A stretch of DNA of 64,000 bases from Mytilus californianus (GCF_021869535.1 NW_026262668.1:108438001-108502000); one strand, 5' to 3'; shown: positions 34,108 through 62,035, numbered from the stretch's first letter. The notes: generated by a model not told the origin, from the letters alone. Numbers and translations are program-made.

Positions 34108-34298
34108 GTTAGTACTAATAATTACTATTATTATTATTAATCGAAAGAAGAATGTAAAGCAAAAGAAAGTTTTTGGGAGAAAATATCGATAATTATTTAC
34201 CAAATAAATGTGTATACTGCGTGATCACGATTTTAAAAGTTCCAAACTTATCATTTTTTTTATTTTATTGATTTTTTTCTATTTAAAAGGGTAGCAGT

Positions 34299-37200
34299 AT
34301 GGCCGCAACAAACAAGACAAATAAAGGTCAAGTAAAAGAGGACGGAAAACTTAAAAAAGACAAGAAATATATTATTCAAGGTTTAAATGGTGGTCCACGG
34401 GAAGGTAAAGATTGTAGTTTCGGCATGGCAAGCAGGCATGGGGCGAATTACATTGCAATGTAATGCTTTTCATTATAATTACTTGGACAAAACGAGCATT
34501 ATATTACAATTACAATTACAAGTATTTTGGAAAGTAATGCATTAAATTACAATTACTTTACCAAAGTAATGCATTATATTACACATTACATTTTATAAAT
34601 TGTATTATCAAAAGAAACATATATACAGCATTTCATGCTGCAATCTTTGTAACTATTAAAAATGTATTATAAAAATCCTTTCGTTGCCCTATTAGACCAA
34701 ATGACAGCAGTCAAACAATTGTGATCACCTTCCTGAAGGTTATCATACAATTTTTGACATACAACCTTGGCCTTAGTCTGTATTAATTTAGATGAGAGAT
34801 GTTTCCGGCTTAGAATTTGAAATTTAGGGTTAGGATTTTCTATAAAGTTCTTAAACTTTTGACTTTCAACTGTTGATAATGGGAGTAAATCACTTCTAGC
34901 AATGTACCCGAAAAGTGAATATATAGCTTTGTTTTGCTTTGGGCCATTTAATTGATATTTCTGAATACCAGATGGATTTACAAAGTTTGCGAAGGTTGGC
35001 TGTTCTTCTGGGTCAGGTTTTTTATATTTCGAAGTATACATCTCTGTGTTTTCTCTAAAAAAGAAATAACAGAAATGTTGTAAGGAATGTATTCTACCAT
35101 TATGTTTTTTGATTATATTGTTAACTTAATATCAATGTTAATTAATTACTTAAATATCACAGATGTTTATACTTGAGGACAACAGAAGAAGTTTCCAACT
35201 TTTCAAATAGAAAAGAATACAGAAAAATTGACCATTTAAATACAGGTCGCAAAACTTAAATCTTAATATATTAAAGTAATTTTCAAAAGACACTTCGCTT
35301 TAATTTGGTTAAAAGCAGAAATAATTAAAAAAATAACTCCTATCTGATCATGTTTTCTGATTGGATTATTTTTACGTTTGTTGTAATGATGTCGCTACAT
35401 ACTTTTGTCCTTCGTGTTGCTAATGTCAGTACAAATTAGCGATACATTTCTTTTGGTGATCTTACATTCGATGAAAAGATCTAATGGACGTTGTGGTAAC
35501 GGCAATTGGAACATATTCGTCGTCATCTGTGAAACAGATATTCAATAACGATCAACCAACTCGTGATGGCGTCCGTAAATTTATTGGTGGTATGATTTCA
35601 ACTTCACCACTTGGAACCATTGGTTTAATAGCTTCCCTGTTAGCAGCAATCCTCTATCAAGGAAATCATGATAGGAAACGAAAGCTCTGGAATATCGTAT
35701 TATCTCTAGCAGGAATGTTGCTTCAAATAGAAATGGCCTGGAAATTTCATAATTGGTAAGCTGAAATCATCTCAGTTGTCGTAGTGTTTTGTTCTCATCC
35801 GATCCTTATTGTCAACTTCTAGATTTGAGTCAAGTAAAATTGTTAAAATAAACATTACAGATGAAGCACCACAGAAGATAACGAAAGGCAAATCGGGCAA
35901 AACTGAAAGTATAGAACTTAAGCTAGGAACTACCGAATTGCCTCTGGAAGACGCCCAGCTTGTTTTGGACCAGTACAAAAAGTTAAAAACAGACGATAGG
36001 TTTGTAAACACATCAGGTTTTCTTACCGAGCTTTTCCGGAAGTTGCAACCATTAGAGAAGGGTCAGTCTACTAGATTAGAAGTGGACATGACAGTGAGGC
36101 AGTTCCAGGATTACAGTGAAGGATTTAAATACAAGATGGATGCTAAACCAAGAGGTGTTTATTTTTCTTTATTAAATATTGATTAAATGGTCTTGCAGTC
36201 AATAATACAGAGTTTTCAATGCACCCTTTTTGTTCACTTGTGGCAATATGTATTAGTATTAGATAAAAACAAATCTAAAATAATCAAATCAATTTACTTT
36301 AATATGATTACATATACTGACATTTTATATGTATGCCTAAATTTGTTTTGCCTGTTTGGACAGGTTATGCATTAATTATTAGTAATGGAACATTTTACCA
36401 GATTCCCGGAGACCCTTTAAGTAGAGAACTACCGAAAAGACCAGGAGCAGACACTGATGCAGGTAAAGTTTTATTTAGTTAAAAGTCTGAATATAGGTGT
36501 TGGATTTTTCTGCAAATAGTCACTCCAATATACCGTTTCACATTCAATACAGCAGTGATGATCTTTTTACTATGCTAAATCTTTTCAAAAGGGATTAGAT
36601 TATCACAAGGTGGCAAGCAAAAAACGACAAGTCGAAGATTCTATAAGATATTTGTTATGTAACGAAAGTCTTTACCTGGAATTCTAGAAATCTTTACCTC
36701 GCAAAAAGTAAAAAAATAACAAAAAAAATTGACAATTTATAACTGTTTACTCTTTTAAAGAAAGGATTTTCATCAGTAAAGTTGTTAGATATAAAGTGAT
36801 GCATCGGGTACAATTTTCGGTCCATGTTCTTTTTCCATTTGTTTCGATATGTTTTCTATAAGTTAAAGAGAAAGCCGAAGGATACCAACTCATAACTCGA
36901 AAATAAACTGACAACGCCATGGCTAAAAAAGAAAACAGACAAGCAACAGTACACAAAACACAACATAGAAAACCAAAGCCAGAGCAACACGAACCCCACC
37001 AAAAACTGTTATAATCTACGTCATTTGGACTCCGTTGGATAATTGTCTCGTTGGCAATCATACCACATCTACATGTACTTATTTTATATATTTTTTTGTC
37101 GTCTGCATATTCAGGCATGTTCTACTACTTTGAGTAACTTATAACGAATGCAAATTACGTCTGGTAAATCCATATTGATCTCAAAATAGTTCCTCTTTTA

Positions 37201-40200
37201 TGTTGTATAATTTTGTTGTATAATTTGTAATATATATTTATGAAGTATTTTTGTTTCTATGGTATTAAGCAGTAGTATAAAGAAATAAAACCCATGTCTT
37301 CCTTAAAGATATATTACTTTCTGTGAACTTACTACCAAATTTCTTTGAAATCAAGGTTGACGATAAATACAGAATTATAAAAACCTTTCCGTATACCTGT
37401 TAGATTTCTGTATGTAAAGTGCAGCTTTAAAGCACATGCACTTGTCTCTGTAAAACTTAACTAAAGGTATAAGGTATATGTTTGTACAGAGACAAGTTCT
37501 TGTGCCTTACAGTTAGGAACAATAATAAAATATGTTTTCATCGCATTTTTAATATGATAACATATTTAAATTCTAACTTTTGACAGGACTATAGGGTCTG
37601 AAATTAAAAGTGAACATAATCATTATTAAAAAGGGAGACTATTCTTATGTTCAATTTGTATGGTCGAAAACAAACCACTGTTCCAGGTTAGGGGAAAAGG
37701 GGGGGGGGGGGGTGGGCGTCCGCAAACATGTTTAACCCGCGTTCCAGGTTAGGGGAGGGGGAGGGTTGGGCGCTCGTAAACATGTTTAACCCCGCCAAAT
37801 TCTGTATGTGCCTGTCCCAAGTCAGGAGCCTGTAATTCAGTGGTTGTCGTATGTTGCTGTATATCATATTTGTTTTTCGTTCATTGTTTTGTACATAAAT
37901 CAGGCCGTTAGTTTTGTCGTTTGAATTGTTTTACATTTGTCATTTCGAGTCCTTTTATAGCTGTCTATGTGGTATGGGTTTTGCTCATTGTTGAAGGCCG
38001 TACGGTTACCTATAGTTGTTAACTTCTATGTCATTTGGTTTTTGGTGGAGAGTTGTTTCATTGGAAATCATACCACATCTTCTTATTTTTATACAATCTG
38101 TCATTATAGTCAGTTCAAAGTTTTCTGTTAAATATGAATCTAAGTGGAAGAACTGGGAAGAAAATAAGCTACGATGATAACAAAAAAGTATAAACACTAT
38201 CCCCAATTTTTTTTAAGGCTAAAAATTGTTGAATCTATAAATGGGAGTTACAAATGGAAAAGTAGTTCATATTATACATAAAATATGTCCACTTTATTTT
38301 TGTCTAACTTGGGTTGTATTGCTCTGGTGCCATTTATTTCGATATATAATTATACAAAAATAGTTTTGTATAAATATATATAAATTTAAACAGACCAGTA
38401 GTGACATTTTGTAGTCAAAATACTTCGCAGTTCCAAATTGAAATTTCTCACCTCCAAGTTGTAATTTCTCAGGACTTCGACATTTCTCAATTCCGAATTG
38501 ACATTTCTCGGTACATGACATTCCTCATCAGTACTTGACATTTTCAGTGCCTAGTTAACATTTTTCAGTGCTCGACATTTCTCAGTTCCAAGTTGACATG
38601 CCATTGCCAGGCCCGCTAAGCTGACATTTCTGAGTAGATAACGTTTCAAAGTTCCATGTTGACATTTCTCAGTACATGATATTTCTTCGTTCCAAGTTGA
38701 CATTTCTCAGTTCCAAGTTGACATTTCTCAGTTCCAAGTTGACATTTTTTAGTTCTAAGTTGACATTTTTTAGTTCTAAGTTAACATTTTTTAGTTTTAA
38801 TTTGACATTTTTTAGTATCAAGTTGACATTTTTAAGTACATGATTTTTTTTTTTCCAAGTTTACACTTCTCAGTTCCAAGTTGACTAATGAAAAGTACTT
38901 CAGAAAGTCGTAAAGTGCATTTTAACAAGTATAATAGGTTTTATTTTCATGTCATTATAGATAAGGTAATGGGACTAAACTTACAAAATTGTAATCCCTA
39001 ATTTTATACATTTACATAATCTTGTTCTAAAATTTGCTTTCTGACACCGTAAAATTTTAATTGTTGTTCATACTGTATTCTCAGAAAACTTGGAAACAGT
39101 TTTAACTGGACTAGGATTCCGTGTAGTAAGGAAAGATAACCTGAAAAAATGGGAAATGGAACATGAAATAAAGACCATCGCTCGTGCTGATCATAAAGCC
39201 TTTGACTGTTTTCTACTTATTTTGTCCAGCCATGGAAATTTAGGGAAATTATATGGTAGTGACGGGCAACAAGTTATGATGAGTCAGCAGTTAAAGTTGT
39301 TTAAAACAGAAGCGTGCAAAGACCTGAAAGGCAAACCAAAACTGTGTTTCTTTCAGGCCTGTCCTGTTGGCGAAGAAGATGGTAGGTTTTATATCAAGTC
39401 TATCCTGTAAATAGTTAAATATTATTGCATTTATACGGTAATATTATCAACATACTTTATTATTAAGCTATATCTCTTTCAAGTCTGTTCATAATTCCCG
39501 ATCCACATGGAGAAATTTAACTTTAAGTGCTGTTGGCTAAACAGTTATGGTAATTATATATTTCAACAAATCGAAATTCCTTCTGCAAAAATAATTTGTA
39601 CTTGAATAAAAAAATAACAGTGTCTACGAAAGGTAACATTTAATCAAAATATGCCCTCATAGTACTTGTAGTTGCAGACACAGCAGCTCTGGCAATGGAA
39701 GGAACAAATAAAGGGAAAAAGAATATTTCCGACGAGAAACCCAAGTTTTTGATTAACGACGTTGATTTTCTGGTGGGATACTCTTCTCTACCTGGATCTG
39801 TTAGTTACCGTTCCGAACAATCCTCATCATTTTACCTCAACTCACTCTACAAAAATCTCAAAGACAAAGGCGAGGCGTAAGTAGAAGTGTTGTCATCATG
39901 ATAGCTGTAACTGTCAATTGTATTACAATTATTAGATAAATTTTCTGAAAAAGAAATATCAGATTTGATCTTTTACGTTGACTTTATAGGATAATTAAAC
40001 GTATTGAAACACAACTATTTAACTGAGTACTAAGACACATATTATTTACCTCATTATACCTCATACCACATCCGCTTATTCATACACAAGAGAAATGTGA
40101 CATTTGTTAGAAATCTAAGATAGCCAAACATATTCTTAACTAATTCTGTTTTCTGTAATATACCATTGTATAAGTGGTAATTCAAAATCTGACTGATTTA

Positions 40201-40339
40201 TTTTAGGTATGATCTTGTTACTATTTTGGAAGATGTTAACCGTGAACTCACTGCTAAGAAAGCTAAGTACAGAGCTGGCGATGTTAATGCTGTATCAACT
40301 TTTGTGTCATGTCTACGAGGACCAATATTTTTCCAATAA
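34299..40339 (+). CDS. Gene 3: caspase with intact His/Cys dyad and unrecognised prodomain, ~377 aa
   Basis: Exons 34299-34404, 35861-36154, 36364-36462, 39085-39381, 39672 (or 39678)-39876, 40207-40339. Motifs YKMDAKPRGYALIISN, KRPGADTD, LSSHG (His 39231), KPKLCFFQACPV (Cys 39360), DFLVGYSSLPGSVSYR, LRGPIFF*. Confidence 0.9.
34433..35080 (-). mobile_element. hAT-family transposon remnant (terminal region plus transposase fragment) in the first coding intron of gene 3
   Basis: ORF 34667-35041: DLLPLSTVESQKF...PKFQILSRKHL...LTAVIWSNR resembles the hAT region after the BED finger; terminus CAGGCATGGGGCGAATTACATTG followed by attac-rich subterminal repeats. Confidence 0.75.
35490..35830 (-). 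mobile_element. Penelope-like element C-terminal fragment
   Basis: Reverse strand of gataggaaacgaaagctctggaatatcgtat encodes an RYSRA..S..DFLDRG..LT.KLL-type segment; same family as 16590-16975. Confidence 0.75.
38440..38886. repeat. Minisatellite, ~20-21 bp unit TTGACATTTCTCAGTTCCAAG
   Basis: About 20 degenerate tandem copies, in the intron between the two p20 exons of gene 3. Confidence 0.9.
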
Positions 40340-43300
40340 TATCTATGTACAAAAGATTGTCAAAATACAATTTAATTACACGTTTGCTTTAATGCCACAC
40401 ATGATTATGAATGATTGTATTTACTACCAAACATGATTAACGGTCCTCTGTTGCTTCAATTAATATAATAGTGGGGAACTAAATATATTACAAAGAAGAC
40501 TAAACATACTAAAGAAAGGTAACGTCGCAAGTGACCTGTTTTAAGGTTGATTACTGACTTTACTCAATATTTTTTTACGATTGACCATAATATTAATTAG
40601 CAATCTCCTACAGGTTAATATTGTTTTGAGATTCTGTGAAATAATATATAGTTAAATAGATCATTATCATTCATGACCTATTTGTTGCTGTATGCTAATA
40701 AACTTACAAACAATAATTATTAAAATCAGACAGCATACTAGGAACATTTTGAATAAAATGGGTACGAAGCAAAAATTTCTAGGAAAACAAGAGGCGGAAG
40801 ATATGATATATAAGGGACATTAAAAACTCATAAGTCGAAGAGAAACTGACAATGCCATGGCAAAACGACAGACGACGAAAAGGCAAACACGTCCACAAAA
40901 CACTGCATAGAAAACTAAAAACTGAGCAACACGAACCCCAATAAAAACTGGTGATCTCAGGTGCTCCAGAACGGTAAGCAGATCTTGAGCCACTAATGGC
41001 ACTAGAGGCAGGGTTTTTATGGTTGATTTTCTGATAGATTTACTGACAAATATGCTTGTAATTTGTATGTTTTTTACCAATCATCTTATCTTTGATACAT
41101 TTCAAACAATTTAAAAGGGTTAGGCAAGGACTTTTTCTTAATAAATATCAGTCTTCAAGTTAATATTTCGAATTTGATTGATACATGTATATAAATATAG
41201 GGTCTAAAAATCAAGAATCAACATTCAATCTGTCTTGGCGTGGATCAGCTTGAAAATAATCTGATTCAGTTACTAAATTGAATTATATAAAAACTTGAGA
41301 ATGTAACGTCAACAATGAGTGTAATAAAAAATAGTTGTTACAATTTACAGATTCACGCAATATTTAGCTATGTAAATTACCGACCGTGCGAGGGCTGTAT
41401 AGCCAGTCAAGGTCGTTAAAAACTCCCATCATCATATGTAAATTGTATGATGTTCAAGATTAATTCCTTTGGTTTATGATGAAACGGTTTTCGTCTATTT
41501 TATCGAATCTATCAAGTTAAAAGAATTTAGCTGGTACATTCGAAATCATGCCCTACCCCTCTGTTTTCTACCTTGTGTGTCCAAATTATGGTTAGCCTCT
41601 ATTATTTGAAAGGTGTTATTTTCAAAAGAATGTCCTGTTCGTAAGAGGTGTCTCGTGATTGGACAGTTTCTTCCTTTGGAATAAAATTACTGGACCGGTG
41701 ATTATTTAGTCTGATTATTTATTAGTTTTATATGTTACTGTTATGGCACTGTAACATTACTACTGATTGATTAAAAAAAACAAATAGATAGACTAAAGCA
41801 AAAAATTATACTGATGGGGAAATAGTGTTTTACTTTATCGAAAGTGACCTCTTTTTCATACATTAAAAGTCGTCTTTAAAAAACGAACGGTCAATGTTAC
41901 AGTCCGAGTTTTATTTAGCCTAAACCAAAGTTATTACTGTAAAGTTTTCCGGTCACCATCACAATTTGGCCTATTTGTATCCGATGAATGTGAAAATGTC
42001 CATATACTAGTATTGTGTATCTTTCATTACCGATTTCGACACTTATTGAATTATAGTTAGCTCATTACTGATATTAACCAATGATCAATATGCTATAATT
42101 GTCTTGGAGCGAAAAAAAAATATATGACCCTTCTGAAGCACTCTTTTTTTTATGAGAATTAGAAGTGTCCGAGGAATTTTATATTTTCTGTTCGTATACA
42201 TATTTTTGTTTCCTATGTGCACATATCGTGTTAATTTTGATTCATTGCTTGAACTGTTTATTTGGACTGCTGATGCCTGATTTTCCTTTTTTGACTAAGT
42301 AGGTTCAGTATCTTCTTGCAGAGAGATCATTCGAGATTTAAAATCAATATCTCTAACAGCCAACCCTCTTAAGGAGCACCTGAATCCACCTCGGGTCTCT
42401 AGCGGGTTTTTGTTGCTCAATCTATAGTTTTCTGTGTATTTTTTTGTAGATTGAATTTTTCTATTCGTCTGTTTTCTTTTGACTTTAAAGATTTCAGTGA
42501 ATCTTTCAATTATTTTAGTGATTTTCAAGTTTTAAAGACCTTTGACATACTATTCAATAATGTTACCTCAAATTAATATAATTTTGTAAACTTTTATTGT
42601 TTGTCCAAATGAGACAGATACATTAAAACCTTTTCTTTTATTTTCAAAATATATTTGTTGGTTATCCTATGTTTACTTGTTCTTGGAAAGAAGCAGTATA
42701 TTAATCAATATTATTTTAATTCTTAGTGTTTTATTATAATGTTTTCAGATAATACCACTACTGGCATCATAAAAACTATAAATACGTTTTAGAACGATTA
42801 AAAATCTGTTGACAAATTTGATTCATTCTACTTAGTATCTTTAATAAAGCTTTTATGTAACACACTTCTGATAAACAAGCATCAACCGAATATAAAATTT
42901 CTGTACTCAATATTCTCGAATAGCTGACCTTTCTCCTTCTTACAAACAATATTTTGATGTTATCATTGTCATGTCACCTAGTCTTCCGCGACTAATATAT
43001 TGATTAAAAAAAGATGGATGAACGACATGGTTTTGCTTTTAATTTGTTTTTGGCTTATAAATTATTTACAAATATAGAAATTACTTGTGGCGAAAGGAGT
43101 ATCTGTTAAAAAATTAATAACTTCGAATCATTAAAACAAGATCGTATCAGATAAACTTAAGTAATAACAGAAATTTATTTTATCCCAAGTTATCGAAGCG
43201 TGTCACATTGAACAAAAAAAAGTATTTAAAAAGGTCTCTAGATGCCTTTTTATTTGATTATCGTGTTGGGTTATTATCTCATTGACGTTCCTCAAACCCC

Positions 43301-43896
43301 CTTTTTGTCTTACACGTACACGTAAAAAGCAAGTTGAAATCTTTAAATAATCAATCTAAACTAAGAAAAATTTGAATAAGTTTTATAACATGCGAGAGAA
43401 GAACAAGTTTGGAGTACTCTGATATCCCCCACTATAAAAATAATGTAAGAAATATATCATGTTTATAATTACATTTTTATTTAACTATGATAACTTTGCT
43501 ATGTCCGTAATACGCTGACATTGCATTTCTACAAGTAGTACACATTTAATAATATGTTCAATTTTTGTATTGAAAAATCTAAATTTTAATGTCAAAGGGT
43601 ATTTTTAAAACGCTTACAGTTGCACACTTGGGACCAATATAATCAACGTCCCGCCTTGAAGATTTCATACAATATTAAGTTTTACAAATAAAATCAGTCT
43701 GTGTAGTCCACGGGAATATTACTTATCAATTAACTCTTAAGTTAATTATGTATAAGCTAAATAGACAAAAGCAAATATTTCAAACTTAACATGACAACGA
43801 TAAACTCGTTTGTTAATTATATTCTTTGGCGACTAATGCATTTTTCATTAAGCAAGTTAATGCACACAGACTTGGATTAAACTTTCGAAAAACAAG

Positions 43897-46800
43897 ATGA
43901 AACCGTCGCAACAGAAAAATGATTCTACCAAAGCGGTAAGTCTTTCATATTTCTGACTTATTATACTATGGAGGTTTTATATGATAAATGAGACAGTTAG
44001 AACAAATAAAACAGAAATGAAATCTATAATTTAAATGATCAATTGTTTGAATGTTCCTGGCTGTACTAAATTAAAGAAGTTAACTAATAAGCAATGCTTT
44101 TCTATTTGTAAGTTATTCAAAATGTATTGTTTGTTTTTCCTCACATCGTCATGGCTCATATTTGGTACACTTAAAAATTTTCTGAATTTTTGTCAGACCT
44201 GAAACTGGCAGAAACAATCGATCATAAATACAAACGAAGCAGTTTGTGAATGACCGACAAAAATCTGCCTTCTTACAGTCATTTCATATAATGTCTAGAT
44301 ACAATGTTGTCTACTCTATGGTCGGGTTGTTGTCTCTTTGACACATTCCCCATTTCCATTCTCAATTTTACAATGGATAAAAGTTGGTTCGTTAAAAAGA
44401 AACTACGAACCCGGAGGGTGAGTGGTAGCTATAAAATATAGTACCGGGTATATCAAACCTGCATATAAGACTTTACAGAGACAACAGAGACAAGCATGAT
44501 TACATTACAAAGTACCGATATACCAAGACAATGCAAGTGTATTATAGGGGAATTGTTATCAACTGCCATTTAAGTAGCAGTTCTGGTTAGAATAAGACTA
44601 CGCAAATTTGTATCCTGATTATGCTTCGTTTCAGTGATAATGACAATTACGAATTTCTCTGAAGTAGAGATATGGCAAATTAATGATAATAGATTACGGT
44701 AATATAATGTAAAATATCAATGAGATTTTTTCATGGAATTACGCTTTAAATGAATATAAATTTTAAACTGAATACGACTTACTCTTTCTTAGGAGTAGCA
44801 TTGGTTATGTGTAAAATTATCATTTACTTAAGCTGCTGATATATTTGCTTTGTAGAAATATAGCCTATGAATTTCAAACTAATGTTATGTCACTTAAGGC
44901 AGTATAAATACCCTTCAACGTCTAGTCTGTGTTTTTGTTAGATGCTTTTTCTGCTTAGTATCGATCTGATGAGTTAAGCCCTTTTCAACTGATTTATATA
45001 GTTTGTTCTTATGTTGTGTTGTAACACCACTGTCCCAGGTTGGTTGGGGGGGGGGGGGGGGGGGGGAGGGGTTGTGCGCTCACAAACATTTCTAACACCG
45101 CCACATTCTTTGTGTGCCTGTCCCAAGCCAGGAGCCTGTAGTTAAGTGGTTGTCGTTGGTTCACGTCCGGCATATTTGTTTTTTTCGTAAATTGTTTTGT
45201 TATAAATTAGGCCGTTAGCTTTCTCAATTGAATTGTTTCATATTTTTCATGTTGGGGCCTTTTACAGCCGACTATATGGCATGGGTTTTTCTCATTGTTG
45301 AAGGTTGTACGGTTGCCTATAATTGCTTACATACACTTCATTTGAACTTTGGTGAATAGTAGTCTCATTGGCAATCATACCACATCTCCTTATTTTTATA
45401 TGAAGCTGGAAATTGTTTTATAATAAGGAAACATATACATTTTATCATTTACTTTTCATCTTAGCAATTTACTTTTCTTTTTAGTTCCGCATTTCAGCAC
45501 GTTAAACTGAGATGACTTCTTGTCGTCAGCTATGGGATGTCAAAATTAATTATGATAAAGCATAATAAACATATACTTGATTGGTTTTTTTTTATAAATG
45601 ATAATTCAGTAGTTACATATGTAGGATACCAATGTAAAGTCGGACCAGAGACGGAAAAAAATAACCAACCCATCTGCCAACCAGATAGGTATGTATTCTA
45701 TTTTACAAATTCTCTTTATCATATGCAAGATTTTTTTGCTTCTTTGCTCTCTTCATCCATTTCTGGAATCCAAAAGACAATCCAGTTGTTTTCTCGTGAT
45801 TTTCTTTCATTTATTTCTTCGAAAACGTCGTATACTGTCCCCTTTTTACTTTTCGAGCCGGTTTTGTTTATTTAATTTGAAAATTTGAAACGAACACTAG
45901 TTCATAGTATTGTCCATTTAAAGTTTGGAAGTTAACTAAAGCTTGATCTGGGACAATCGACATCAAATTTAATTTTCAAGTTAAGGTATCAGTGATTTTC
46001 ATATTTGTATATGTGTTTTTTGTTTGTTTTTTGTTTTACTTTTAAAATCGAGTGTACCAAAAATACAGATACCCGTATCATATGCAGGAATTGCGTATTC
46101 GATTGTTTTATTTATTAATGTAAATTAAATTACAAAAAAAGATATACAATAAGCTCGATCTATGACCCAAATTCTGACCATTAGGGACTCGGATTATCAT
46201 TATTTATATATAGATACGAAGTATACAAAAGCCAGCCTTTATTTCTTTGTTCTTGTTTTCTCTGTTGGTTATATATTTTCTTTTCGATAAATGTTTAACC
46301 CAAAAAATCCTATATAGTTTAAACAACTACTTTATATACACATTTAAGGTCAATGTACGGTAAACTGGCTGTTTCACAAATTTTGCATACAACTTTGGCA
46401 AGTTGAACTATAACTGTAACTGGAAATGCATTTATCTCTTTTATCTGTTTAATATTCTGAAATATTATGGAAGTTCATTCAAAATAGATGTACCTTTGTA
46501 AAGAAAGCTTATAAAATCGACGAAAAACGTTCTTAAATTTGTCTTAAAATCATCAAATCTCCAATTACCAATGCATAGATTTTTCTAAAAAAAAATGATA
46601 TGCTGTTTTCAGAGACCACTTATAAAAGGGAGAGGAAAAAAAGTGGTCTCATAGGACAGGAGGTCTTTTAATACATTTTCAATCAATATGAAATGCACTA
46701 CATACGGATCTAAAATTAATGATCTTATGATGGCAGGTTTGGCTGAACTTGAATTTCCGTTTTAACGATTTGCATCAGTCAAAGAGGTATTCCAGGTGAA

Positions 46801-49800
46801 AAAATACCACAGAACGTCGAAGTAACCGTAACGTCATCGTGTTGTACAATGTTAGCTGCAAAACGTCGATTTTTGACGTTTTTCACTACCAACTACCAAA
46901 CTGTAACAGATTGGTTTATATATCAAAAACGAGGTCTCTGACCCTATCATTCTTTTCTAACTATTAAACAGAAATTTATTTATCAACAAACATCTTATGA
47001 AGTGGAAATTGCAGGTTTATGATTTTATGACAAATTAAAGAACGTTTTCGCCAATTATGTGTGCCTAATTTGAAATATAATATATTTATAAATCAACTGT
47101 TCGAATGAATGTACCTAGGACTAAATTAATGCTAGTGTAGTATTCCCAGCAAATTTAAATATCTCATCGACAGCTTGCTAAACAAAACAAACCGCAAGAA
47201 CAAAAAATGGTGGAAGAAAAAAAAAACATATTAAACAGCTTGAACAAATACTTTTAGGTCTTTCCACGGAAAAGTGGAATAACCTAATGATAATTACAAC
47301 AACATCAAAATGTCTTTCCACAGAAAGGTCTAAATACCTTATGATTATAGTCCGAGTCTGTTATGATCAGAGTTTGTCATAGGCTGAGATTGTTATAGGC
47401 TGTGATCATGATATAACGAGTAGCCAGCAACGCCTTTAAGTGTTAATATATATTCACATTATCTTCTCTAACCATTTTTTCGGACAAACTCAATTGTCTT
47501 TTCATAGAAAGTTTATTTTTATACCACACAATTTTTTTTTTAACATTTTTGTTCTTATGTCAACAGTTTCGTTCTTGCTATTAATACTGTGTAATTTTTG
47601 CCGGAGTTCCCACTCATATATATAGATACATATACCGACATTGATTTTTTAGAACATAATTATATTGAAGTTAAGCACTTTAGTTAAGCTTTTTATCAAT
47701 ATCACATATTTAGCACATATCTCAGTTTCTTATTTCTGCTGCAAGGCGCAAAAAAGCGTATAACTGTCATGTTTTGCTAGGTGGTAAAGAAAAGCATTAT
47801 TGTATTTTACTTTGTATAAAGCATTAAAATGATGTACTTCAGAATGTTCTTCGAATCTATCGTTTTCAATCTTTATCAAACATAGCAATAAACTCATAAA
47901 ATCACGAACCATTACATTCTGCTTAAAGATGGATGTGTTTTGTCATTTGCAATAAAGCTACTCTCTCGATTACCGAGTTCACCACTGTAAATTATAGAAT
48001 GAAGTAATAGACTCTATATTTATTATATCTGAGTAACTTTTGTGCTTTCTTTCCATCAGAGTTTCTAGTGGGAGTATATGATTCCATTCTATTCGGTATG
48101 GTTAATGACAAGAAACTTGTTTGTTGTTGATGGTATACCTTAATAAACAGACGGGAACAGGGTTTATATAATTATATATTACATATGGTGTAGCATTCTT
48201 CTTTTTTCAATGGTTATTATGATCACGTAATTCAAAGGGTATTCCATGTACCTGCAGCCTTGTTTCTATTTTCAAGTGTATGGACGCTATGTTTCTATTT
48301 AAATATATATTGACGATCAATATTAAATATCTCGCAAAATACAATGTAAAATACACAGAAAGAACATTGACGTCCATTTCCGTAATACACTATTTAAGTA
48401 TGTAATATATAAACTAAGGACTTTCACTCAGTCAATACGTTATATACGGACCTGGGGCCAGTATCATGAAGCAATCTTACTGCTTAAGATCATCTTAAGA
48501 TCATCTTATCTACTAAGAGTGTATCTTGAAGTAATCTTAGAATGATTGACAGCCCTTAAAATTCATGTTGCACTCTTAACCCTAAGAGTACTCTTTATCC
48601 CTCTCGGAACACTCTCTTAGTTTTAATCTTAACGACTGGGTATCTCAAACGTCGATAACCAACTTAAGATCGTCTTTGATTACTCTTAGCACATTTTAAG
48701 TGTATCAGCAATCTTTTTTCACTGAAAACTTAACAGAAATTTCTAAGAGTGGTCAGGGGCACCCCTATCTCTCTCTTAGTTGATAAAATTGCGCTTGCAA
48801 TGTTCTTGCATGTGCGTTCAAGAGAACAAAATAGGATATCCAGAAGGATCTTTAGAGATCGAACAAATCCATTGGAGTGGATGTAAACAATTATAGGCAA
48901 GCGTACGGCCTTCATTGAGAAAAACCCATACCGTTTAATTGGCTATACAAGGCCCAGACATGAACAATATGAAACTATTCAATTGAGAGAACTAACGGCC
49001 TAATTCATAACAAAACAATTTACGAAAAATCATATATGAGACATGTACCAACGACAACCATAGGAGCAAAAAACGACAACCACTCAATAACAGACTTTGG
49101 ACCGAGCTTTGGACAGGCACATATAGGATAATATAGAATGTGACGGGGTTAAACATGTTTGTAGGCGCCAACCCTCCCCTAACATGTGACAGTGATGTAA
49201 CAGTTCAACATAAGAACAAACAATAGAAACAAGTATTGAATATAAAAGTATGTTTTTCGAGCGTTCTATTAAACGCACAGATGACTTTTGCCGTGAATTC
49301 TAATATTCTCCTAAAAAATCAAAGACGGTCACTTCGGAAAAGTCGATAAGAGTACTATCTTAACTCGCAGTCGTAAGTGTATACTAAGATAGCCGGTAAA
49401 TTGTTGAGAGTATCCCACGAGGGGATTGGAGATGCGCTCTTAGCACCATCGTAACTTTCTCGTAAAGCGTTCGTAAGTTTCCTCTTTAATGAAGCTTAAG
49501 ATAGGATTTCATGATACTGGCCCCTGGGGCCGGTAACAAGAAGCTCTCTTAACACTTAAGATCACCTTTAAAGTTATTAATAAGACTGTCTTAGTGACTA
49601 AGAGTCTAACAAAAAGCAATCTTATATTAATCTTAGAATGATTGACAGCCCTTAAGACTTTCGAATTTCTTACGGATTTAAGGGAATTCTTTGCCTTCCC
49701 TTATCATAAACTTATCAATTCGGGTAACTCAAAAAGATCTTAATTTTCTTGTCTTTTAGTAAGAACTCTTTGCATCAACTTAAGCATTTACGAGCGTAAC

Positions 49801-52800
49801 ACGATTCTTACTTAACTCGTTTTAATGTAAGTGTGGTTCTACTCACCCCTAAACTACTCTTTGAATGAAAATGGCGCTTGTTTTAAATATGATGAATAAT
49901 TAACAGGTGAAGAAAGCAAGATCGCTTTACTGGCATGAACATACGGATTTTGTGTTTTTAAAATTTACTGTTACAAACTTTTGGAAATTATTCTAAATTA
50001 AGGAATATATCTCCCTCACACAAAGCTCTGATTCCTTGCCCGACTTTGGCTATACTCTTTTGTCATTTTTGGTTTATAAGCTCTTCATATTTTTAATAAG
50101 CTTTGGATTTTCAAATATTTTGGCCTCAATGAATCATCACTGAAGAGACATTTATTGTCCAAATCCGCATCTGGTGCAGAAAAATTGGTACCTTTAATGT
50201 TATCACAAGACGTTTATTCCATGACCACTGAAATCCTCTTGATTTTGTGACAGATGCATGGACAAATTATCAAGAAACAACAAATTATCAAGAAACATCG
50301 ACAGAGCGAGCATATATGACTTATGGTTATCTCATTTACCCCCCCCCCCCCCCCCCCCCCCGATTTCAAATTAGGGGATATTTGAATATCTGTAATCGTT
50401 TAATTTGAACTATTTGTTTGTTTTGAAGAAAAGAAAAATTTCATTTAGAAAAGAAAAGTTTTCCCCCGTTTTACCTCCATTATAAAACAAGCGCCATTTT
50501 CGTTCAAAGAGTAGCTTAGGGGTGGGAAGACAGACTTACATTAAAACGTGTTAAGTAAGAATCGTGTTACGCTCGTTTATGCTTAAAAAGATGCAAAGAA
50601 TTCTTACTAAAGGACAAAAAATTAAGATGTTTTCGAATTAGCCGAATTGATAAGTTTATGATAAGGGGATGCGAAGAATTCCCTTAAATCCGTAAGAAAT
50701 TGGAATGCTCGTTCTCCATAACCAAATGTCTCGACTGTCGATAGTGTTGCTATCCTTTTACTGCATGCAACCACTTAAAGTAACTAGAATCTTTTAAAAG
50801 CCTGTACCGTTTACTTTGATATAATGGCCACTGTCTAAACCATAATAAAACATTTAGATTCTCGGTAATTATTAAACCGGCCTTTTAGTTTTATAGGATT
50901 CTTAAGAAAAATTTCCATTTAATTTAGAATAATTCAGAATTAATTATTTTTTTCTGGCTATGCGTAAAGCGCCCGGTTTTCAGCCCAATTTTTGAATGAA
51001 AGAGGAATGCTTATAAAAGACCTCATCCTTTAACACTTGCAAGAATAAGTTTCTGAGATTTCTTATAAAACTGTATATGTATGTTAATTTAAGTTGTATG
51101 GCACATTGCTGACATATATGATACCCACATTTCTAGTCTCGTGTGATTTAGAATTTGTGTTATTTTACAGACGCTTGTCTAGTGTTTATTATCGTATATT
51201 GACCTCTAGATGTGTTTTGTGTCATTGATGTGCTGTCTCATTGACGTTCACCCAAATATTCTTTTCTTCAAAATCAATTATTTATTTATTCCGGACTACC
51301 AATGTAGTTTCACAAAAACATGAAATGTGATTTAAGAAAAAAAAAAAGTCTTTGTAGAGTGTCTTCCAGTCATCAACTCTATGAAGCCTTATATGCTTTG
51401 GTCTTATAGTATCCTCTGTGAAGAAATTTGAAAATTGACCATTCCGAATAAAGAATCGACTCTGGTGGCAATACATAGGGAAATGTTTTACATAATCAAA
51501 ATAAAATGAGTTACTGTCATGAATGATCTTCGATATATTCTGACAAGTTTGGTTCGAATCGGTCGTGTATACTCATTAGTTTCACAACACAAGCTGAAAT
51601 GAGATTTCGCAAAAAGTTAAATTAAAACTATGTTTCATCATGACCGTCCTGTATTCGACAGGAAAAGTACGAAAAGAGGATTATTTATAGAAAATTTTCA
51701 AATCATCATGACTATGAAGTTTGAAAATATTTAGTATTTCTTTGGGAAAAGTAAGGCTTCGGAAGAAACAAAATTTGAAAAATTAACAATGTTGATCAAG
51801 AACGACCTCAGACAACAATGTTTCTGTGCCTGCTATATGATTCAGTATGAAGCAATGATCTTTCCATAAGAAGATTTGGAAATGATAGTTAAGCCTATAT
51901 AAATTAAGGTATATCTTAACATCAACAAAAAAAACAAGTTTTTTATTTTTATTTTATACATGTATTTTGATGTTATATTTGTTCTTGTGCAATGTTGTTA
52001 TTTTATTATACATGTATTGTTAAATATTTGTGGATCACTTGTGGTGTTGCATAATGGGTGCTTCATGTTTTCCTATTTAAAAAAACATTGTCTGCTATTC
52101 TCATCAATCTGAAGTCTGCAAATGATTGTCGTATAAAACAGCTTCAATTTTGTTTATATGTATAATAAGTTATAAGCGAAAAATATTCGATCATTTATAG
52201 TTCTCATCTTTCATTTGGATGTTTGTTGTTCACTTGTTTGTTTGGTGTGATCTCTCTTTTTCAAATTTAAAAATTAAGCAAAAAACAGGGTTTTTTTTTT
52301 AAATGTTATGTTGACAAATAAAAAATCTTAAACATTTATATTGAATGCTGAAAATTAAACTATGAAAATAAGGAGATCATGTATTATTGCCATTGACACA
52401 ACTATCCACAAAAAAATCAAAGGACAATTATGTGAACAACTACAGGTCACCGTACGGCCTTCAACAATGAACAAAAACAACACCGCATAGTTAGTAGGCC
52501 GTGTTAAACATAGTTGTAAGCTTTCAGCCCTCCCCTGACCTTGGGCAGTGGAATAGCAACACAACATATGTACAAATTTTTAAATTCAGTTGGAAAAAAC
52601 ACGACTCGTTATATTGGCAGTAAATACAAAAACGCCTAACAAAAAGACATAAAAACACAAAGTACCGATCTAAGAATACTCGCTGTTACTGAAAGCTAGT
52701 TCAATGCCCAAATTTTAACTAATAGATAAACCATGTTTTACCAGACTAAATAATCAATTATTACACCTCCAACGTGTTTGTTTTATGCCAAAATAATAGT

Positions 52801-55800
52801 CATAGAGTATAGAGTTTCCCGTGTAAAACTTAAATATCCAAATCAAGAAACTTACAATCATTGCTGTTCATGTTAGATTTTTTTTAAGTAAGTTCCCCTG
52901 GAGTAAATTTCCGCAGTTTAGAAAATTCTTGATTGTTAAAAGCAAGATATAACCAAGAAAAAGTTAAGTGTTATTAAATTTTCTATTAAACGGATCTTCG
53001 TAGAGTTTCACAATACACTGTGATCCATGACAACACATGTACAAGTCTGCTATTAAAGGGGCACAACTAGTGCTCATAGGAATACCTACAACCTATCGAT
53101 AAAATATATTGCCGAAACATACATTAATATTGTCAAGGAGAATACTAATAGCTGTTATCATTTTATCACAGTTCAAGTAAATATATCTACCATATTTATC
53201 TTTTCTATTTTATAATAAAAGGCTGAATATGAGTTGCAGCGAATACATTTGCAATCAAAGGTCCATTTGAATAAATAAGAAAGCTTCTATTTGATAAGAT
53301 TGTGTGGGAGTGTAGTTTAAATGATCGAAAAGACAAAACTGTCTACCGAAAAGGAACCATTAAAAGCACGTATTTCTTCACACTCAAAAAAAAAAATTCC
53401 ATTGTATGCATATGCTTCATTAAAGTAATAAAAATAAGTTCCTTTGATATTAGCCAGGGAACTAGTTAAAAGGACGGAACGATTAGTTATAGAATACTAT
53501 GTAGAAGCATAGATGAAACGATATTTGACCGGGGCATTTTTTGCGTATTTTATGTACCCAAGACATAGTAGAGACTACTGAATGTTTAGAAAAGGCCTTA
53601 AACTGAGATGTGGTTATGATATAAGTGTCTACTATTTGACTATCCGTGGAGCGCACGACCTTGAATGTAGAAAAATTTATAATTTCATTCTTAGAAACGC
53701 CCGTGAAATTATAAATTTTTCGGTACGAACACAAAACGTTGTCAAAGTACTTTAAGTATATTTCTTATCCTATAAATGAACGTATTGTTGTTAACCTTTA
53801 AATTCATTTCTAAATTATATCCATGCGTTTCTTCAAATAAGAAACTAGTGATTTTTATCAGACTTCCAAATTTTTATAAAAGGACGAAGGAACATCTTTA
53901 ATTACGATCACCAAAAATAACGTTCGTTGTAAACATTTGTTGTTAGTTTTACCAAGGATTTGTATCGTCTTACTATACAAATCCTTGGTTTTACATATTA
54001 CTTTTCTTCTCATACTAGTAGTTGAAAATAATTATAATTTTTATGACACCTTTTTTGTCCAATCGAATAACTCATATATCCAGGTAAAAACAAGAAAAAG
54101 GATACAAAAGCTGCACAGGTCGTAGAACTCCATTTAGGAACAACAGTGCTACCACTTAAAGATGCTCGTGCTGTATTAAGTCTGATAGAACAGTTGAAAA
54201 CCGACCAGAAATATTCCGCCACACTGGGTTTTTTGTCAGATTTGTTCCGGAAGTTGAATACGTTGGAAGATGGACAATTCTCCAGAATAGAGATTGACAT
54301 GACAGTTAGACAATACCAAGACTATACCGATGGATTTCAATACAGACTTACTGTAAAACCAGTGGGTAAGTCAGTATTAGGATCATACTAGCGGATTTAA
54401 GAATATATGCTACAAAACAGATATAAAGCGCGGCTATATATGACACAAAAAGAAAGTTGTTGATGTAAGTACTACACTGAAATACTCAAAACCAAGATAA
54501 AAAACTTTGAGTACGTTTATACTTGCAACTTCTACTGAAGAATAGTATGTAGATAAACACACTTCATCATCCCTTCTGAAATTCTTTATCTGCATCCAGT
54601 AAATTTTCAACTATAAATATTTCAGTTATTCTGACGTTAATATGATCTTTGTATCATCGTAACTTGTATGGTATAAAATGCTAGTATAAGGGAACGACCA
54701 TTTAACTTCAAGGGGGGTTATGTTTTTTTCCTAAAAAAATATTCTGATCCCCAATTTGATGAAAAAAAATATTGTGGTCAAGCAGATGACAAAAAAAAAA
54801 TTCTGAATCCAGATTTTCCTCATACCTTATAGTGTTAAGTTTTGAAAATTTTCTGACTCAGACAAAACCATAACCCCCCCCCCCCCCCCTTGAAGTTAAA
54901 TGGTTGCTCCCTAACACAATGAGAACATTTGTTTTATGTATGAAATCATTGACAAGATTAATCAAACACGATTTATACGAAAGTTCAAATTACTCTAGTG
55001 TGATGATTAATTATTATAGATATATTTTCTGAAATATATTCTACTAATTTTTCGTTGAAAATAAAGGTGTTATTTTGTCTATAAAATATATATATATTGA
55101 AGTCGTGTATAAGAGGTATTAAAACAAATACAGTCGACTAGTATAAACAATGGAGTAACTAAATTAATACTTTATAGAATTTATCTGTCAAAACAGTGCA
55201 TGTTAATGACGACGGCAATATGTGTCAAAATGAAGCTTTACAATGCTGGTTCTAATGGTTTTTGTCAAAACAGTGCTTGAAAATGATGGTTCAAATGATA
55301 TATGCCAAAGCAGTGCCCCATAATAATGGCTCTTATGATATTTGTTAAAAAATGTCCGATAACGACGGTTAAATTGTACTTGTAAAAAATATATTTTGCC
55401 AAAACAGTGCAATACTGGTATAACATTGGTACTGATGGTATATGTAACATATAATGATGGTTTCAACGATATGTGTGAAAACATTAACAGATAATGATGG
55501 TTACAAATGATATTTGTCAAAATGTTGGTTTCCTTGGCATTTTTCAAATTTCTGCCTGATAAAGATGGTTCCAACGATATATGTCAAAACAGTGCAAATT
55601 AATGAGGTATCTAAAAAAAAATTGTCCAAACACTGCCAGAAAATGATATTTCCAATAGTGTTTGTCAAGCAGTGACATGTAACGATGGTTACAATGACAT
55701 GTGTCAAAACACTGCCTGAAAATGAAGGTTCTTATATTTTTAGTATTTGTCAAAACAATGTCTGACATTAATGGTGCCTATGGCATCATGTATCAAAACA

Positions 55801-61800: not shown

Positions 61801-62035
61801 AAATTTGAGGTTTGTGTGTATATGTTTGTGTGAATAAAACCAGATGTTGTGTAAAATTGTTATATGTATATCCTTGTTGTTGAATTATATCATATATTGT
61901 AGGTGCGATTTGGTTGCAATTCTTGAGGACATGAATAGAGAATTGGCAGAAAAGAAGTCAGAACTTAGACCTAATGATTTAGGATCCGTAACAATGTTTG
62001 TTGATTGTCTCAGAGGTCATTTATTTTTTCAGTGA
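43897..62035 (+). CDS. Gene 4: caspase paralog of gene 3 with intact His/Cys dyad, ~357 aa
   Basis: Firm exons 54084-54365, 56296-56394, 58509-58802, 60580-60742, 61903-62035; tentative phase-compatible 5' exons 43897-43935 and 45625-45688. Motifs GYCLLITN, NRPGVEGD, ISSHG (His 58655), KPKIFLFQACNI (Cys 58784), DFLYGFSTLPG, LRGHLFF*. Confidence 0.85.
48455..49523. mobile_element. PIF/Harbinger-like non-autonomous element with a nested repeat
   Basis: Perfect 16-bp TIR GGGCCAGTATCATGAA / TTCATGATACTGGCCC with CTG on both flanks. Confidence 0.8.
49664..50701. repeat. ~220-bp inverted repeat (49664-49885 / 50483-50701) with ~600-bp spacer
   Basis: aatttcttacggatttaagggaattct...gcgcttgtttta versus taaaacaagcgcc...gaattcccttaaatccgtaagaaatt. 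Confidence 0.85.
50134..50177 (+). ncRNA. Degenerate hammerhead motif, third repeat family
   Basis: CATCA CTGAAGA GAC-ATTTATT-GTC CAAA TCCGCA TC TGGTG; core GAAA is CAAA here, so it is predicted inactive. Confidence 0.55.
54690..54911. mobile_element. 222-bp Harbinger-like MITE (a related single end lies at ~6140-6376)
   Basis: GGGAACGACCATTTAACTTCAAGGGGGG / CCCCCCTTGAAGTTAAATGGTTGCTCCC, with TAA on both flanks. Confidence 0.8.
55190..56260. repeat. Minisatellite, ~40-bp unit ATAATGATGGTTCCAATGATATTTGTCAAAACACTGCCTG
   Basis: About 25 degenerate tandem copies; period 40 visible at 55801/55841. Confidence 0.9.
56575..57110 (+). mobile_element. CR1-type LINE ORF2 C-terminal fragment
   Basis: KLEQLQLEVARIVTGL...GWETLAERRERRKLQLFYKI...IPPTIQST.VYPLRNG.DII.PF.RLS. 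Confidence 0.8.
57105..58230 (-). mobile_element. HINE-type element with tandem core repeats and a nested repeat
   Basis: Ends in tcttgtt (reverse complement AACAAGA), ccgt microsatellite, three to four cores ttgtgaacgcaactcctc...gacagaaagctc. Confidence 0.65.
59865..59926 (+). mobile_element. 5'-truncated retroposon tail with 14-bp target-site duplication
   Basis: TCATTCTTTCAATC at 59851 and 59927 flanks gtcctgaatatgcatg...(caat)n; a similar decayed tail lies at ~8355-8410. Confidence 0.8.

What the first reader, a model, noticed from the sequence alone, without database searches (positions are those of the whole stretch)
35861..54365. Unrecognised ~90-aa caspase prodomain shared by genes 3 and 4, occupying the FN3 slot
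Exons 35861-36154 and 54084-54365 encode IELKLGTTELPLEDAQLVLDQYKKLKTDDRFVNTSGFLTELFRKLQPLEKGQSTRLEVDMTVRQFQDYSEGFKY and VELHLGTTVLPLKDARAVLSLIEQLKTDQKYSATLGFLSDLFRKLNTLEDGQFSRIEIDMTVRQYQDYTDGFQY. They are strongly conserved with each other, look mixed alpha/beta, and do not resemble CARD, DED or DD to me. Each is a phase 1-1 exon directly before p20, where genes 1 and 2 have an FN3 exon, so prodomains appear swappable.
Basis: partly seen in the sequence, partly recalled or inferred. Interest (0 to 1): 0.75.

Follow-up and report, generated by a model that had tools for sequence, protein, structure and literature searches.

The report
Mussel-only orphan module on caspases
Three neighbouring California-mussel caspase genes carry, directly in front of the protease domain, a conserved and expressed 73-residue module that matches no known protein family or fold; it adds another unusual N-terminal module to the several already reported on bivalve caspases.

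Summary
Exons 35861-36154 and 54084-54365 encode the quoted peptides (56% identical, E 6e-35). Both have AG/GT splice sites and are phase 1-1. RNA contigs splice the first exon directly onto the caspase p20 exons. Gene 3 is the NCBI protein 'caspase-3-like isoform X1' of Mytilus californianus. A third copy lies 27.7 kb beyond the window, and the genome holds only these three.

The new part is 73 aa, not about 90. The exon also encodes a lysine-rich lead-in and, at its end, the ordinary caspase N-terminal peptide (YKMDAKPRG; caspase-8 has YQMKSKPRG).

An exhaustive HMMER search of 1.84 billion proteins found the module only in mussel sequences. Pfam, PDB sequence profiles and profile comparisons with mussel DED, FN3 and caspase p20 gave nothing significant. 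Four PDB fold searches gave only noise-level matches, and an ESM Atlas search gave no hit.

Purifying selection is strong (dN/dS 0.04). The two AlphaFold models disagree (alpha/beta versus three helices), so the fold is open.

My best reading is a mussel-restricted binding or recruitment module that stays attached to the protease. Its function is inferred, not shown. Unusual prodomain modules are already published for bivalve caspases, so this is a new variant of a known theme.

The scan has not reported this module on other DNA.

The parts
34287..34404 (+). Gene 3 upstream coding exon (..KGSSMAATNKTNKGQVKEDGKLKKDKKYIIQGLNGGPRE), lysine-rich, donor in phase 1
   Evidence: 100% tblastn match to P0015 residues 3-41. 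The donor GAAG|GTAAAG was read. The first two residues (MK) must come from a further upstream exon that I did not locate.
35861..35907 (+). Gene 3 module exon, 5' part: basic lead-in (D)EAPQKITKGKSGKTE
   Evidence: A K/R-rich patch is conserved upstream of the module in all paralogues and orthologues.
35908..36126 (+). Gene 3 orphan module, 73 aa (SIELKLG...QDYSEGF) = P0015:58-130
   Evidence: It is transcribed and spliced. dN/dS is 0.04 against the M. galloprovincialis-like orthologue. No family or fold match was found.
36127..36154 (+). Gene 3 module exon, 3' end: canonical caspase N-terminal peptide KYKMDAKPR(G), phase 1 donor
   Evidence: It aligns to human caspase-8 YQMKSKPRGYCLIINN and to the Amphiura caspase YSMTHIPRGHCVIINN.
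36364..36462 (+). Gene 3 first p20 exon (GYALIISNGTFYQIPGDPLSRELPKRPGADTDA; strand beta-1 and the P1-pocket Arg)
   Evidence: RNA joints 36154>36364 and 36462>39085; 100% match to P0015:140-172.
39085..39381 (+). Gene 3 main p20 exon with catalytic His (SSHG) and Cys (QACPV)
   Evidence: Pfam Peptidase_C14 E 5e-22.
39663..40339 (+). Gene 3 linker/p10 exons (39663-39876 and 40207-40339 including the stop), with an intron between them
   Evidence: RNA joints, translation, P0015 match.
54084..54118 (+). Gene 4 module exon, basic lead-in (KNKKKDTKAAQ)
54119..54337 (+). Gene 4 orphan module, 73 aa (VVELHLG...QDYTDGF)
   Evidence: An orthologous fragment from another mussel (P0005) was found.
54338..54365 (+). 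Gene 4 caspase N-terminal peptide (QYRLTVKPV(G)), phase 1 donor
56296..62035 (+). Gene 4 caspase exons: 56296-56394, 58509-58802 (SSHG, QACNI), 60580-60742 (p10; the pocket Arg is replaced, AYN), 61903-62035 including the stop
   Evidence: The model was spliced by homology with AG/GT sites and gives an intact frame. Pfam Peptidase_C14 matches the p20 and p10 exons. I had no RNA check for this gene.

Best explanation
Shown:
- The feature is a genuine, expressed, selectively constrained 73-residue protein module.
- It is found only in mussels and has no detectable relative in any known family or fold.
- It sits in the N-terminal prodomain of three tandemly arrayed caspase genes of Mytilus californianus (genes 3 and 4 of the window, plus LOC127727751 27.7 kb downstream), which NCBI names caspase-3-like or uncharacterized.
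- It is encoded in a phase 1-1 exon. That exon also carries a conserved lysine/arginine-rich lead-in and, at its 3' end, the ordinary caspase N-terminal peptide. The module is therefore fused to the catalytic core with no flexible linker.
- The catalytic His and Cys are kept in all three genes. Genes 3 and 5 also keep the Arg/Gln/Arg of the P1 pocket.

Inferred:
- The module most likely remains attached to the mature enzyme.
- Together with the basic patch, it most likely acts as a binding surface. [quoted passage not shown]
- It probably does not act as a death-fold type homotypic oligomeriser.
For: Reality and expression:
- The peptides translate as quoted and are 56% identical.
- RNA contigs splice exon A onto p20.
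- P0015 is identical to gene 3.

Distribution:
- Six-frame searches of the 1.65 Gb genome, with the protein and with a profile, find exactly three copies, all in this cluster.
- An exhaustive profile search of 1.84e9 proteins returns 11 hits. Eight are mussel-type fragments or caspases and three are low-complexity or repeat proteins.

Constraint:
- Against the close orthologue, dN is 0.015 and dS 0.351.
- Against two more distant orthologues, dN is 0.10-0.15 with synonymous sites saturated.
- The module diverges at about the same rate as the catalytic domain: 59/54, 41/52 and 44/51 % identity.

No known family:
- Pfam at E<=10 on 13 members shows no consistent hit.
- The PDB sequence profile gives nothing significant.
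- hhalign probabilities are 3% for DED, 1% for FN3 and 0.3% for the caspase domain.

Tight fusion to the core:
- YKMDAKPRGYALIISN aligns to caspase-8 YQMKSKPRGYCLIINN.

Basic patch:
- 5-9 K/R in the 11-22 residues upstream, in every paralogue and orthologue.
- The caspase-7 K38KKK exosite that binds RNA is the published precedent (PMC6815152).

Variable upstream parts:
- Gene 3 has a 41-aa basic N-terminus. Gene 5 has a 459-codon Q/N/K/S-rich exon. The module is constant.
Against: - No binding, localisation or activity data exist.
- The fold is unresolved. AlphaFold model 1 (pLDDT 66) is beta-alpha-alpha-beta-beta and model 2 (pLDDT 75) is three helices. Hydrophobic periodicity favours a strand at module residues 55-62.
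- The alignments are shallow (Neff about 2), so remote homology to a known fold cannot be excluded.
- Conserved Asp residues (YKMD|A in gene 3, YRMD|S in gene 5, the invariant QD|Y) could be processing sites that remove the module. That would favour the cleavable-prodomain rival.
- Gene 4 lacks an RNA check here and has lost the p10 pocket Arg.
- The taxonomic range rests on unnamed fragments.
Confidence: 0.55

Rival explanations
1. The module is a very diverged single death-effector domain (DED) inherited from a caspase-8-like ancestor. It would work by homotypic DED-DED recruitment to a FADD-like adaptor.
For: - The best solved match of the catalytic domain is human caspase-8 (116 bits, against 92 for caspase-3), with a near-identical N-terminal peptide.
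- Bivalves have one-DED caspase-8-like genes, and DEDs are single exons (PMC7836458).
- Of the three profile comparisons, DED scored best (E 0.014). It aligned R-x-E-[VI]...V-R-Q-[FY]-Q to the RxDL...V-x-x-Y-Q end of mussel DEDs.
- AlphaFold model 2 is all-helical.
Against: - The hhalign probability is only 3.2%.
- The Pfam DED model finds 46 DED exons in this genome down to 27 bits, but not these three exons. It also gives no hit at E<=10 on 13 module sequences.
- No death-fold entry appears among the listed rows (top 50) of any PDB fold search.
- Only 2-3 helices are predicted in 73 aa, against six in about 80 aa for a DED.
- Module residues 55-62 show strand-type periodicity.
- The p20 tree groups genes 3-5 apart from the DED-linked p20 exons, though with weak support.
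- Mussel DED exons end right after helix 6, whereas this exon runs on into the caspase core.
Confidence: 0.1
2. The module is a removable inhibitory or folding-assisting prodomain. It would keep the zymogen inactive or soluble and be cut off at an Asp during activation, with no binding role of its own.
For: - Executioner caspases lose their N-terminal peptides on activation (established knowledge).
- Candidate Asp sites lie at the module/core junction: YKMD|A in gene 3 and YRMD|S in gene 5. QD|Y is invariant, and LEVD and IEID motifs lie inside the module.
Against: - No junction Asp is conserved in all three paralogues; gene 4 has YRLTVKPV.
- The YxM..PRG peptide is part of the folded caspase core in solved caspases, so a cut there is unlikely.
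- By established caspase structure, the N-terminus lies far from the active site, so direct blocking is unlikely. This is inference.
- Conservation equal to that of the catalytic domain, plus a conserved basic patch, suggests more than a disposable peptide.
Confidence: 0.15
3. It is not an autonomous domain. It would be an N-terminal elaboration that packs onto and extends the caspase fold itself, for example by adding strands and helices to the core or the dimer surface, and so tune stability or dimerisation.
For: - There is zero-length linkage to the caspase core peptide.
- Structure predictors are unsure about the isolated module. AlphaFold gave pLDDT 66 and 75 with contradictory models. 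ESMFold2 gave pLDDT under 50 in at least one run.
- In model 1 the last module strand pairs with the YKMD segment.
- The module co-evolves at the same rate as the catalytic domain.
Against: - It is encoded in its own symmetric exon at a slot where paralogues carry an autonomous FN3 domain.
- I could not obtain contact information for a full-length model, so this reading is untested.
Confidence: 0.15

Closest known systems
Non-death-fold prodomain modules of bivalve caspases: two DSRM domains in Crassostrea gigas Cg3C-like, and FN3 and PB1 in Mytilus coruscus caspases (PMC7836458; PMC10967218)
   Same: Both are an extra folded module encoded upstream of p20 in lineage-expanded, tandemly duplicated caspase-3/6/7-like genes. 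Both were apparently acquired through symmetric exons. Genes 1 and 2 of this same cluster carry FN3 in the same exon slot.
   Different: Those modules belong to widespread Pfam families with known binding activities. This one has no family, no recognisable fold and no occurrence outside three mussel caspase genes. In the M. coruscus survey, proteins like this would count among the 30 caspases 'without any specific domain'.
Death-fold recruitment domains of initiator caspases (DED of caspase-8/10, CARD of caspase-2/9)
   Same: They occupy the same position N-terminal to the catalytic domain, have a similar size (73 against about 80-90 aa), and the catalytic domain resembles caspase-8. A recruitment role is the default expectation for a long prodomain.
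   Different: There is no significant sequence, profile or fold similarity. There is no flexible cleavable linker between module and core. Fewer helices are predicted and there may be strands.
N-terminal domain exosite of human caspase-7 (K38KKK; PMC6815152)
   Same: A lysine-rich patch lies a short distance upstream of the Y-x-M core peptide of an executioner-type caspase. In caspase-7 it stays on the mature enzyme and enhances cleavage of RNA-bound substrates. All module-bearing paralogues and orthologues keep such a patch.
   Different: The caspase-7 N-terminal domain is short and disordered. Here a conserved 73-aa module lies between the patch and the core. RNA or substrate binding has not been tested.

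Membership tests
Caspase (Peptidase_C14, clan CD), the host protein | p20/p10 caspase fold with a catalytic His-Cys dyad | tested here: met
   Pfam PF00656 matches the p20 and p10 exons of genes 3 and 4 (E 5e-22 to 7e-5) and P0004 (E 1e-41). The motifs SSHG with QACPV (gene 3), QACNI (gene 4) and QSCQA (gene 5) are present. The best PDB hits are caspase-8 and caspase-3.
Caspase (Peptidase_C14), P1-Asp specificity pocket | Arg (after beta-1), Gln (QAC) and Arg (p10, SWR/SYR) that bind the P1 aspartate | tested here: inconclusive
   Gene 3 has KRPG, QAC and SYR. Gene 5 has DRPG, QSC and SYR. Gene 4 has NRPG and QAC, but AYN replaces the p10 Arg. This was read from alignments only.
Death effector domain (DED, PF01335) | Match to the DED profile | tested here: not met
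   hmmscan found no DED hit at E<=10 on 13 members. A six-frame DED search of the genome finds 46 DED exons, none at the module. hhalign against 17 mussel DEDs gave probability 3.2%.
Death effector domain (DED, PF01335) | Six-helix death fold with an RxDL motif in helix 6 | tested here: inconclusive
   The models show 2-3 helices. No death-fold entry is among the listed rows (top 50) of the PDB fold searches. The models are of low to moderate confidence and contradict each other. R-x-E-[VI] aligns weakly to RxDL.
CARD (PF00619) / Death (PF00531) / PYD | Match to the family profile | tested here: not met
   No hit at E<=10 on any of 13 member sequences or on the two exons. HMMER filters may drop very weak matches.
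Fibronectin type III (the module in the same slot of genes 1 and 2) | Profile similarity to the cluster's own FN3 exons; all-beta sandwich | tested here: not met
   hhalign against 7 FN3 exons of genes 1 and 2 gave probability 1%. A strong amphipathic helix is predicted at module residues 36-51. The Pfam 'Fn3-like' PF14310 hit at E 0.07 is below threshold.
dsRNA-binding motif (DSRM) / PB1 (other bivalve caspase prodomain modules) | Match to the family profile | tested here: not met
   No hit at E<=10. The predicted element order does not fit alpha-beta-beta-beta-alpha.
Partial internal duplicate of caspase p20 (beta1-alpha1-beta2-alpha2) | Significant profile or pairwise similarity to the p20 N-terminal part | tested here: not met
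   hhalign gave probability 0.3%. Smith-Waterman scores against shuffled sequences gave z of about 1.

The most novel reading that the evidence does not exclude
The module is a domain that arose within the mussel lineage, either de novo or diverged beyond recognition. It would form a new, non-death-fold class of caspase recruitment or exosite domain. Combined with a basic patch and, in one paralogue, a roughly 460-residue Q/N-rich region, it would target active caspases to a mussel-specific platform, nucleic acid or condensate, in a cluster that also holds FN3-bearing pseudo-caspases as possible partners.
Probability: 0.25. Interest if true: 0.7.

Novelty: new variant of a known kind. Interest (0 to 1): 0.5.

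Why it matters
Caspase activation and substrate choice are usually explained through death-fold prodomains. Bivalves have greatly expanded caspase families, and a few exotic prodomain modules have been published for them.

This module differs from those. It belongs to no family, occurs only on three clustered caspases, is old enough for synonymous sites to be saturated between mussel lineages, and is as constrained as the protease domain. If it proves to be a binding domain, it would be a clean example of a lineage-born domain being wired into cell-death or immune proteases. It would also give a handle on what the expanded mussel caspases actually sense or cut.

In practice it means that caspases listed as 'without prodomain domains' in mussel surveys are not all short-prodomain executioners.

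Tried and rejected
1. Degenerate duplicate of the p20 N-terminal part. A MAFFT alignment of fragments placed p20 exon pieces on the module, which prompted the idea. hhalign gave probability 0.3% and the shuffling control z of about 1, so I rejected it. The placement was an alignment artefact.

2. Diverged FN3. hhalign gave probability 1%, so I rejected it. I found no FN3 remnants in genes 3/4 and no module remnants in genes 1/2 (all E>0.3).

3. Diverged DED. Not supported. I keep it as a low-odds rival.

4. PDB sequence profile. The only hit under 1e-3 is a designed three-fold-repeat beta-trefoil (4qkr, E 4.6e-4), built from three sub-threshold repeats (each i-E 38 or worse). I treat it as an artefact of summing.

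5. ESM Atlas feature searches. The best rows were unannotated phage or bacterial clusters with a low recognition score, and there was no named hit. The Atlas shape search gave no hit.

6. Word-index protein search with the bare exon. It found only three genomic fragments, because of the length window. A region search with P0004 found only P0014.

7. Complex prediction with two copies of the module gave no verdict: ipSAE 0.00, with the fold uncertain in ESMFold2. This is neither support for nor evidence against self-association.

8. The first coding exon of gene 4 and the exon encoding the first two residues (MK) of gene 3 were not located.

Full report
**1. Observation**

The two peptides are 56% identical over 82 residues without gaps (E 6e-35). 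Both exons lie between consensus AG and GT sites and are phase 1-1.

The window is G000:C88:108438001-108502000 of a 1.65 Gb, 175-contig genome. NCBI proteins named Mytilus californianus match it at 100% identity apart from HSP ends that overrun splice sites, so it is the California mussel.

**2. Gene models and expression**

P0015, 'caspase-3-like isoform X1 [Mytilus californianus]' (386 aa), is gene 3. Its exons are:
- 34287-34404: basic N-terminus;
- 35861-36154: the exon in question;
- 36364-36462: beta-1 and the pocket Arg;
- 39085-39381: His and QACPV;
- 39663-39876;
- 40207-40339.

Contigs of four RNA-type runs, one of them on record as RNA-Seq, carry the joints 36154>36364, 36462>39085, 39380>39662 (39671 in one run) and 39876>40207. 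The exon is therefore transcribed and spliced directly onto p20.

Gene 4 gives an intact frame through exons 54084-54365, 56296-56394, 58509-58802, 60580-60742 and 61903-62035. It has His and QACNI, but the p10 pocket Arg is replaced.

A third copy lies at G000:C88:108529702-108529920, in LOC127727751 (P0014; a full-length relative from another mussel is P0004, 799 aa). There a single 459-codon exon rich in Q, K, N and S precedes the module exon.

**3. What part is new**

The last 11 residues of the exon (YKMDAKPRG, followed by YALIISN in the next exon) align to human caspase-8 YQMKSKPRGYCLIINN and to an Amphiura caspase YSMTHIPRGHCVIINN. That segment is the ordinary start of the caspase catalytic domain.

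The first ~15 residues are a lysine-rich lead-in. They hold 5-9 K/R within the 11-22 residues upstream of the module, in every paralogue and orthologue.

The novel module is the 73 residues in between (P0015:58-130; window 35908-36126 and 54119-54337). It is joined to the caspase core without a linker.

**4. Distribution**

Six-frame searches of the whole genome, with the protein and with an 11-sequence profile, find exactly the three clustered copies. The next best E-values are 4.6 and 9.95.

An exhaustive HMMER profile search of 1.84 billion representative proteins gave 11 hits at E<=1e-3. Eight are mussel-type: fragments of the gene 3, 4 and 5 types, and P0004. Three are repeat or low-complexity proteins, for example a TALE-like repeat protein.

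At least three sequence variants exist for both the gene 3 type and the gene 5 type. The triplication therefore predates the split of those mussel lineages.

**5. Constraint**

Over 82 codons, gene 3 against the M. galloprovincialis-like orthologue gives dN 0.015 and dS 0.351 (ratio 0.04). Against two more distant orthologues dN is 0.10 and 0.15, with synonymous sites saturated.

Between paralogues the module is about as conserved as the catalytic domain: 59 against 54%, 41 against 52%, and 44 against 51% identity.

**6. Comparison with known families**

- Pfam at E<=10 gives nothing consistent on the exons or on 13 member sequences.
- The PDB sequence profile gives only an artefactual summed hit to a designed trefoil.
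- Profile-profile comparisons with alignments built from this genome give DED probability 3.2% (E 0.014), FN3 1% and caspase domain 0.3%.
- The Pfam DED model finds 46 DED exons in the genome but none here.
- A p20 tree groups genes 3, 4 and 5 together (86/80). It does not place them with DED-linked p20 exons, though deep nodes are unsupported.

**7. Fold**

AlphaFold2 on the whole exon (6 sequences) gave pLDDT 66 with the order beta-beta-alpha-alpha-beta-beta. On the 73-aa module (11 sequences) it gave pLDDT 75 with three helices.

The two models disagree about module residues 55-71. Alignment-averaged hydrophobic moments favour strands at residues 3-8 and 55-62 and helices at 20-25 and 36-51.

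The fold searches gave no match above noise:
- Foldseek against PDB: best E 0.23 and 0.99;
- ESM Atlas: no hit.

No death-fold entry appears in the listed rows.

**8. The FN3 slot**

In gene 1 the FN3 exon (about 6403-6691) has a phase 1 acceptor and donor. It ends ...SKPG and directly precedes the exon encoding ..NGFALIIANHSDF.., the homologue of the beta-1 exon of gene 3. The first FN3 exon of gene 2, on the minus strand, is also phase 1-1.

Positional equivalence is therefore real. An actual swap remains an inference, because no remnants of either exon type are detectable in the other genes.

**9. Mechanism**

Three things are shown: the architecture, the retention of catalytic residues, and the constraint. 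The rest is inferred from the following points.
- The module is fused directly to a core peptide. By established caspase structure that peptide lies far from the active site.
- The basic patch is conserved.
- The upstream regions vary while the module stays constant.

From these I consider a retained binding module, acting in recruitment or as a substrate exosite, the most likely role. The caspase-7 K38KKK exosite is the nearest functional precedent (PMC6815152).

The rivals are a cleavable inhibitory prodomain, an integral extension of the caspase fold, and a diverged DED.

**10. Literature**

Bivalve caspase surveys describe CARD, DED, DD, DSRM, FN3 and PB1 prodomain modules. They list most caspases as having no specific prodomain domain (PMC7836458; PMC10967218). 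The papers I read do not describe this module.

Earlier notes of this scan describe the FN3 pseudo-caspases of genes 1 and 2 and a DSRM-caspase elsewhere in this genome.

**11.

Noticed in passing
L040:5383-6759 (G000:C88:108527383-108528759), upstream of the third module copy: Gene 5 (LOC127727751, P0014/P0004) has a single 459-codon exon of low complexity (Q 14%, K 13%, N 12%, S 10%) directly before the module exon. This is a long, probably disordered Q/N-rich prodomain on an apparently active caspase. From memory, it recalls the Q/N-rich prodomain of the yeast metacaspase.
   Followed up: partly
P0016 (M. galloprovincialis caspase-3-like isoform X3) compared with window 36364-36462: The annotated isoform skips the 99-nt exon that encodes strand beta-1 and the P1-pocket Arg. 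It joins the module exon directly to the main p20 exon and would probably give a non-functional or regulatory protein.
   Followed up: no
window 39662-39671: Alternative or species-specific acceptor: three runs join 39380>39662, while the RNA-Seq run X10 joins 39380>39671, a 9-nt difference in the intersubunit linker.
   Followed up: no
window 60580-60742: Gene 4 has lost the p10 Arg of the P1 pocket (AYNPKDGEKTGSYY instead of SYR...) and has a very short intersubunit linker (QACNIETEDKMQ...). Its substrate specificity or activity may differ from gene 3.
   Followed up: partly
window 35450-35850 and 36850-38250 (upstream of the module exon and in the intron after the first p20 exon of gene 3): RNA-run contigs pile up at summed depths of hundreds to thousands, with many internal rearrangement joints. 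This is typical of abundant transcribed repeats or transposable elements, not of the caspase transcript (depth about 6-58).
   Followed up: no
G000:C2:66.88-67.34 Mb (L009, L012-L016, L046, L048, L051, L058, L059, L063, L064): A large cluster interleaves DED exons and caspase p20 exons, suggesting a tandem expansion of caspase-8-like genes. The genome has at least 46 DED exon matches.
   Followed up: no
window 15040-36154: Gene 2 (FN3 pseudo-caspase, minus strand) and gene 3 (plus strand) lie head to head, with about 3.4 kb between their first located coding exons. Shared regulation is possible; another note of this scan also records this.
   Followed up: no
alignment A3: Method caution: MAFFT placed the first about 40 residues of isolated p20 exon fragments onto the module instead of onto p20. 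This created a false impression of homology, which profile and shuffling tests removed.
   Followed up: yes
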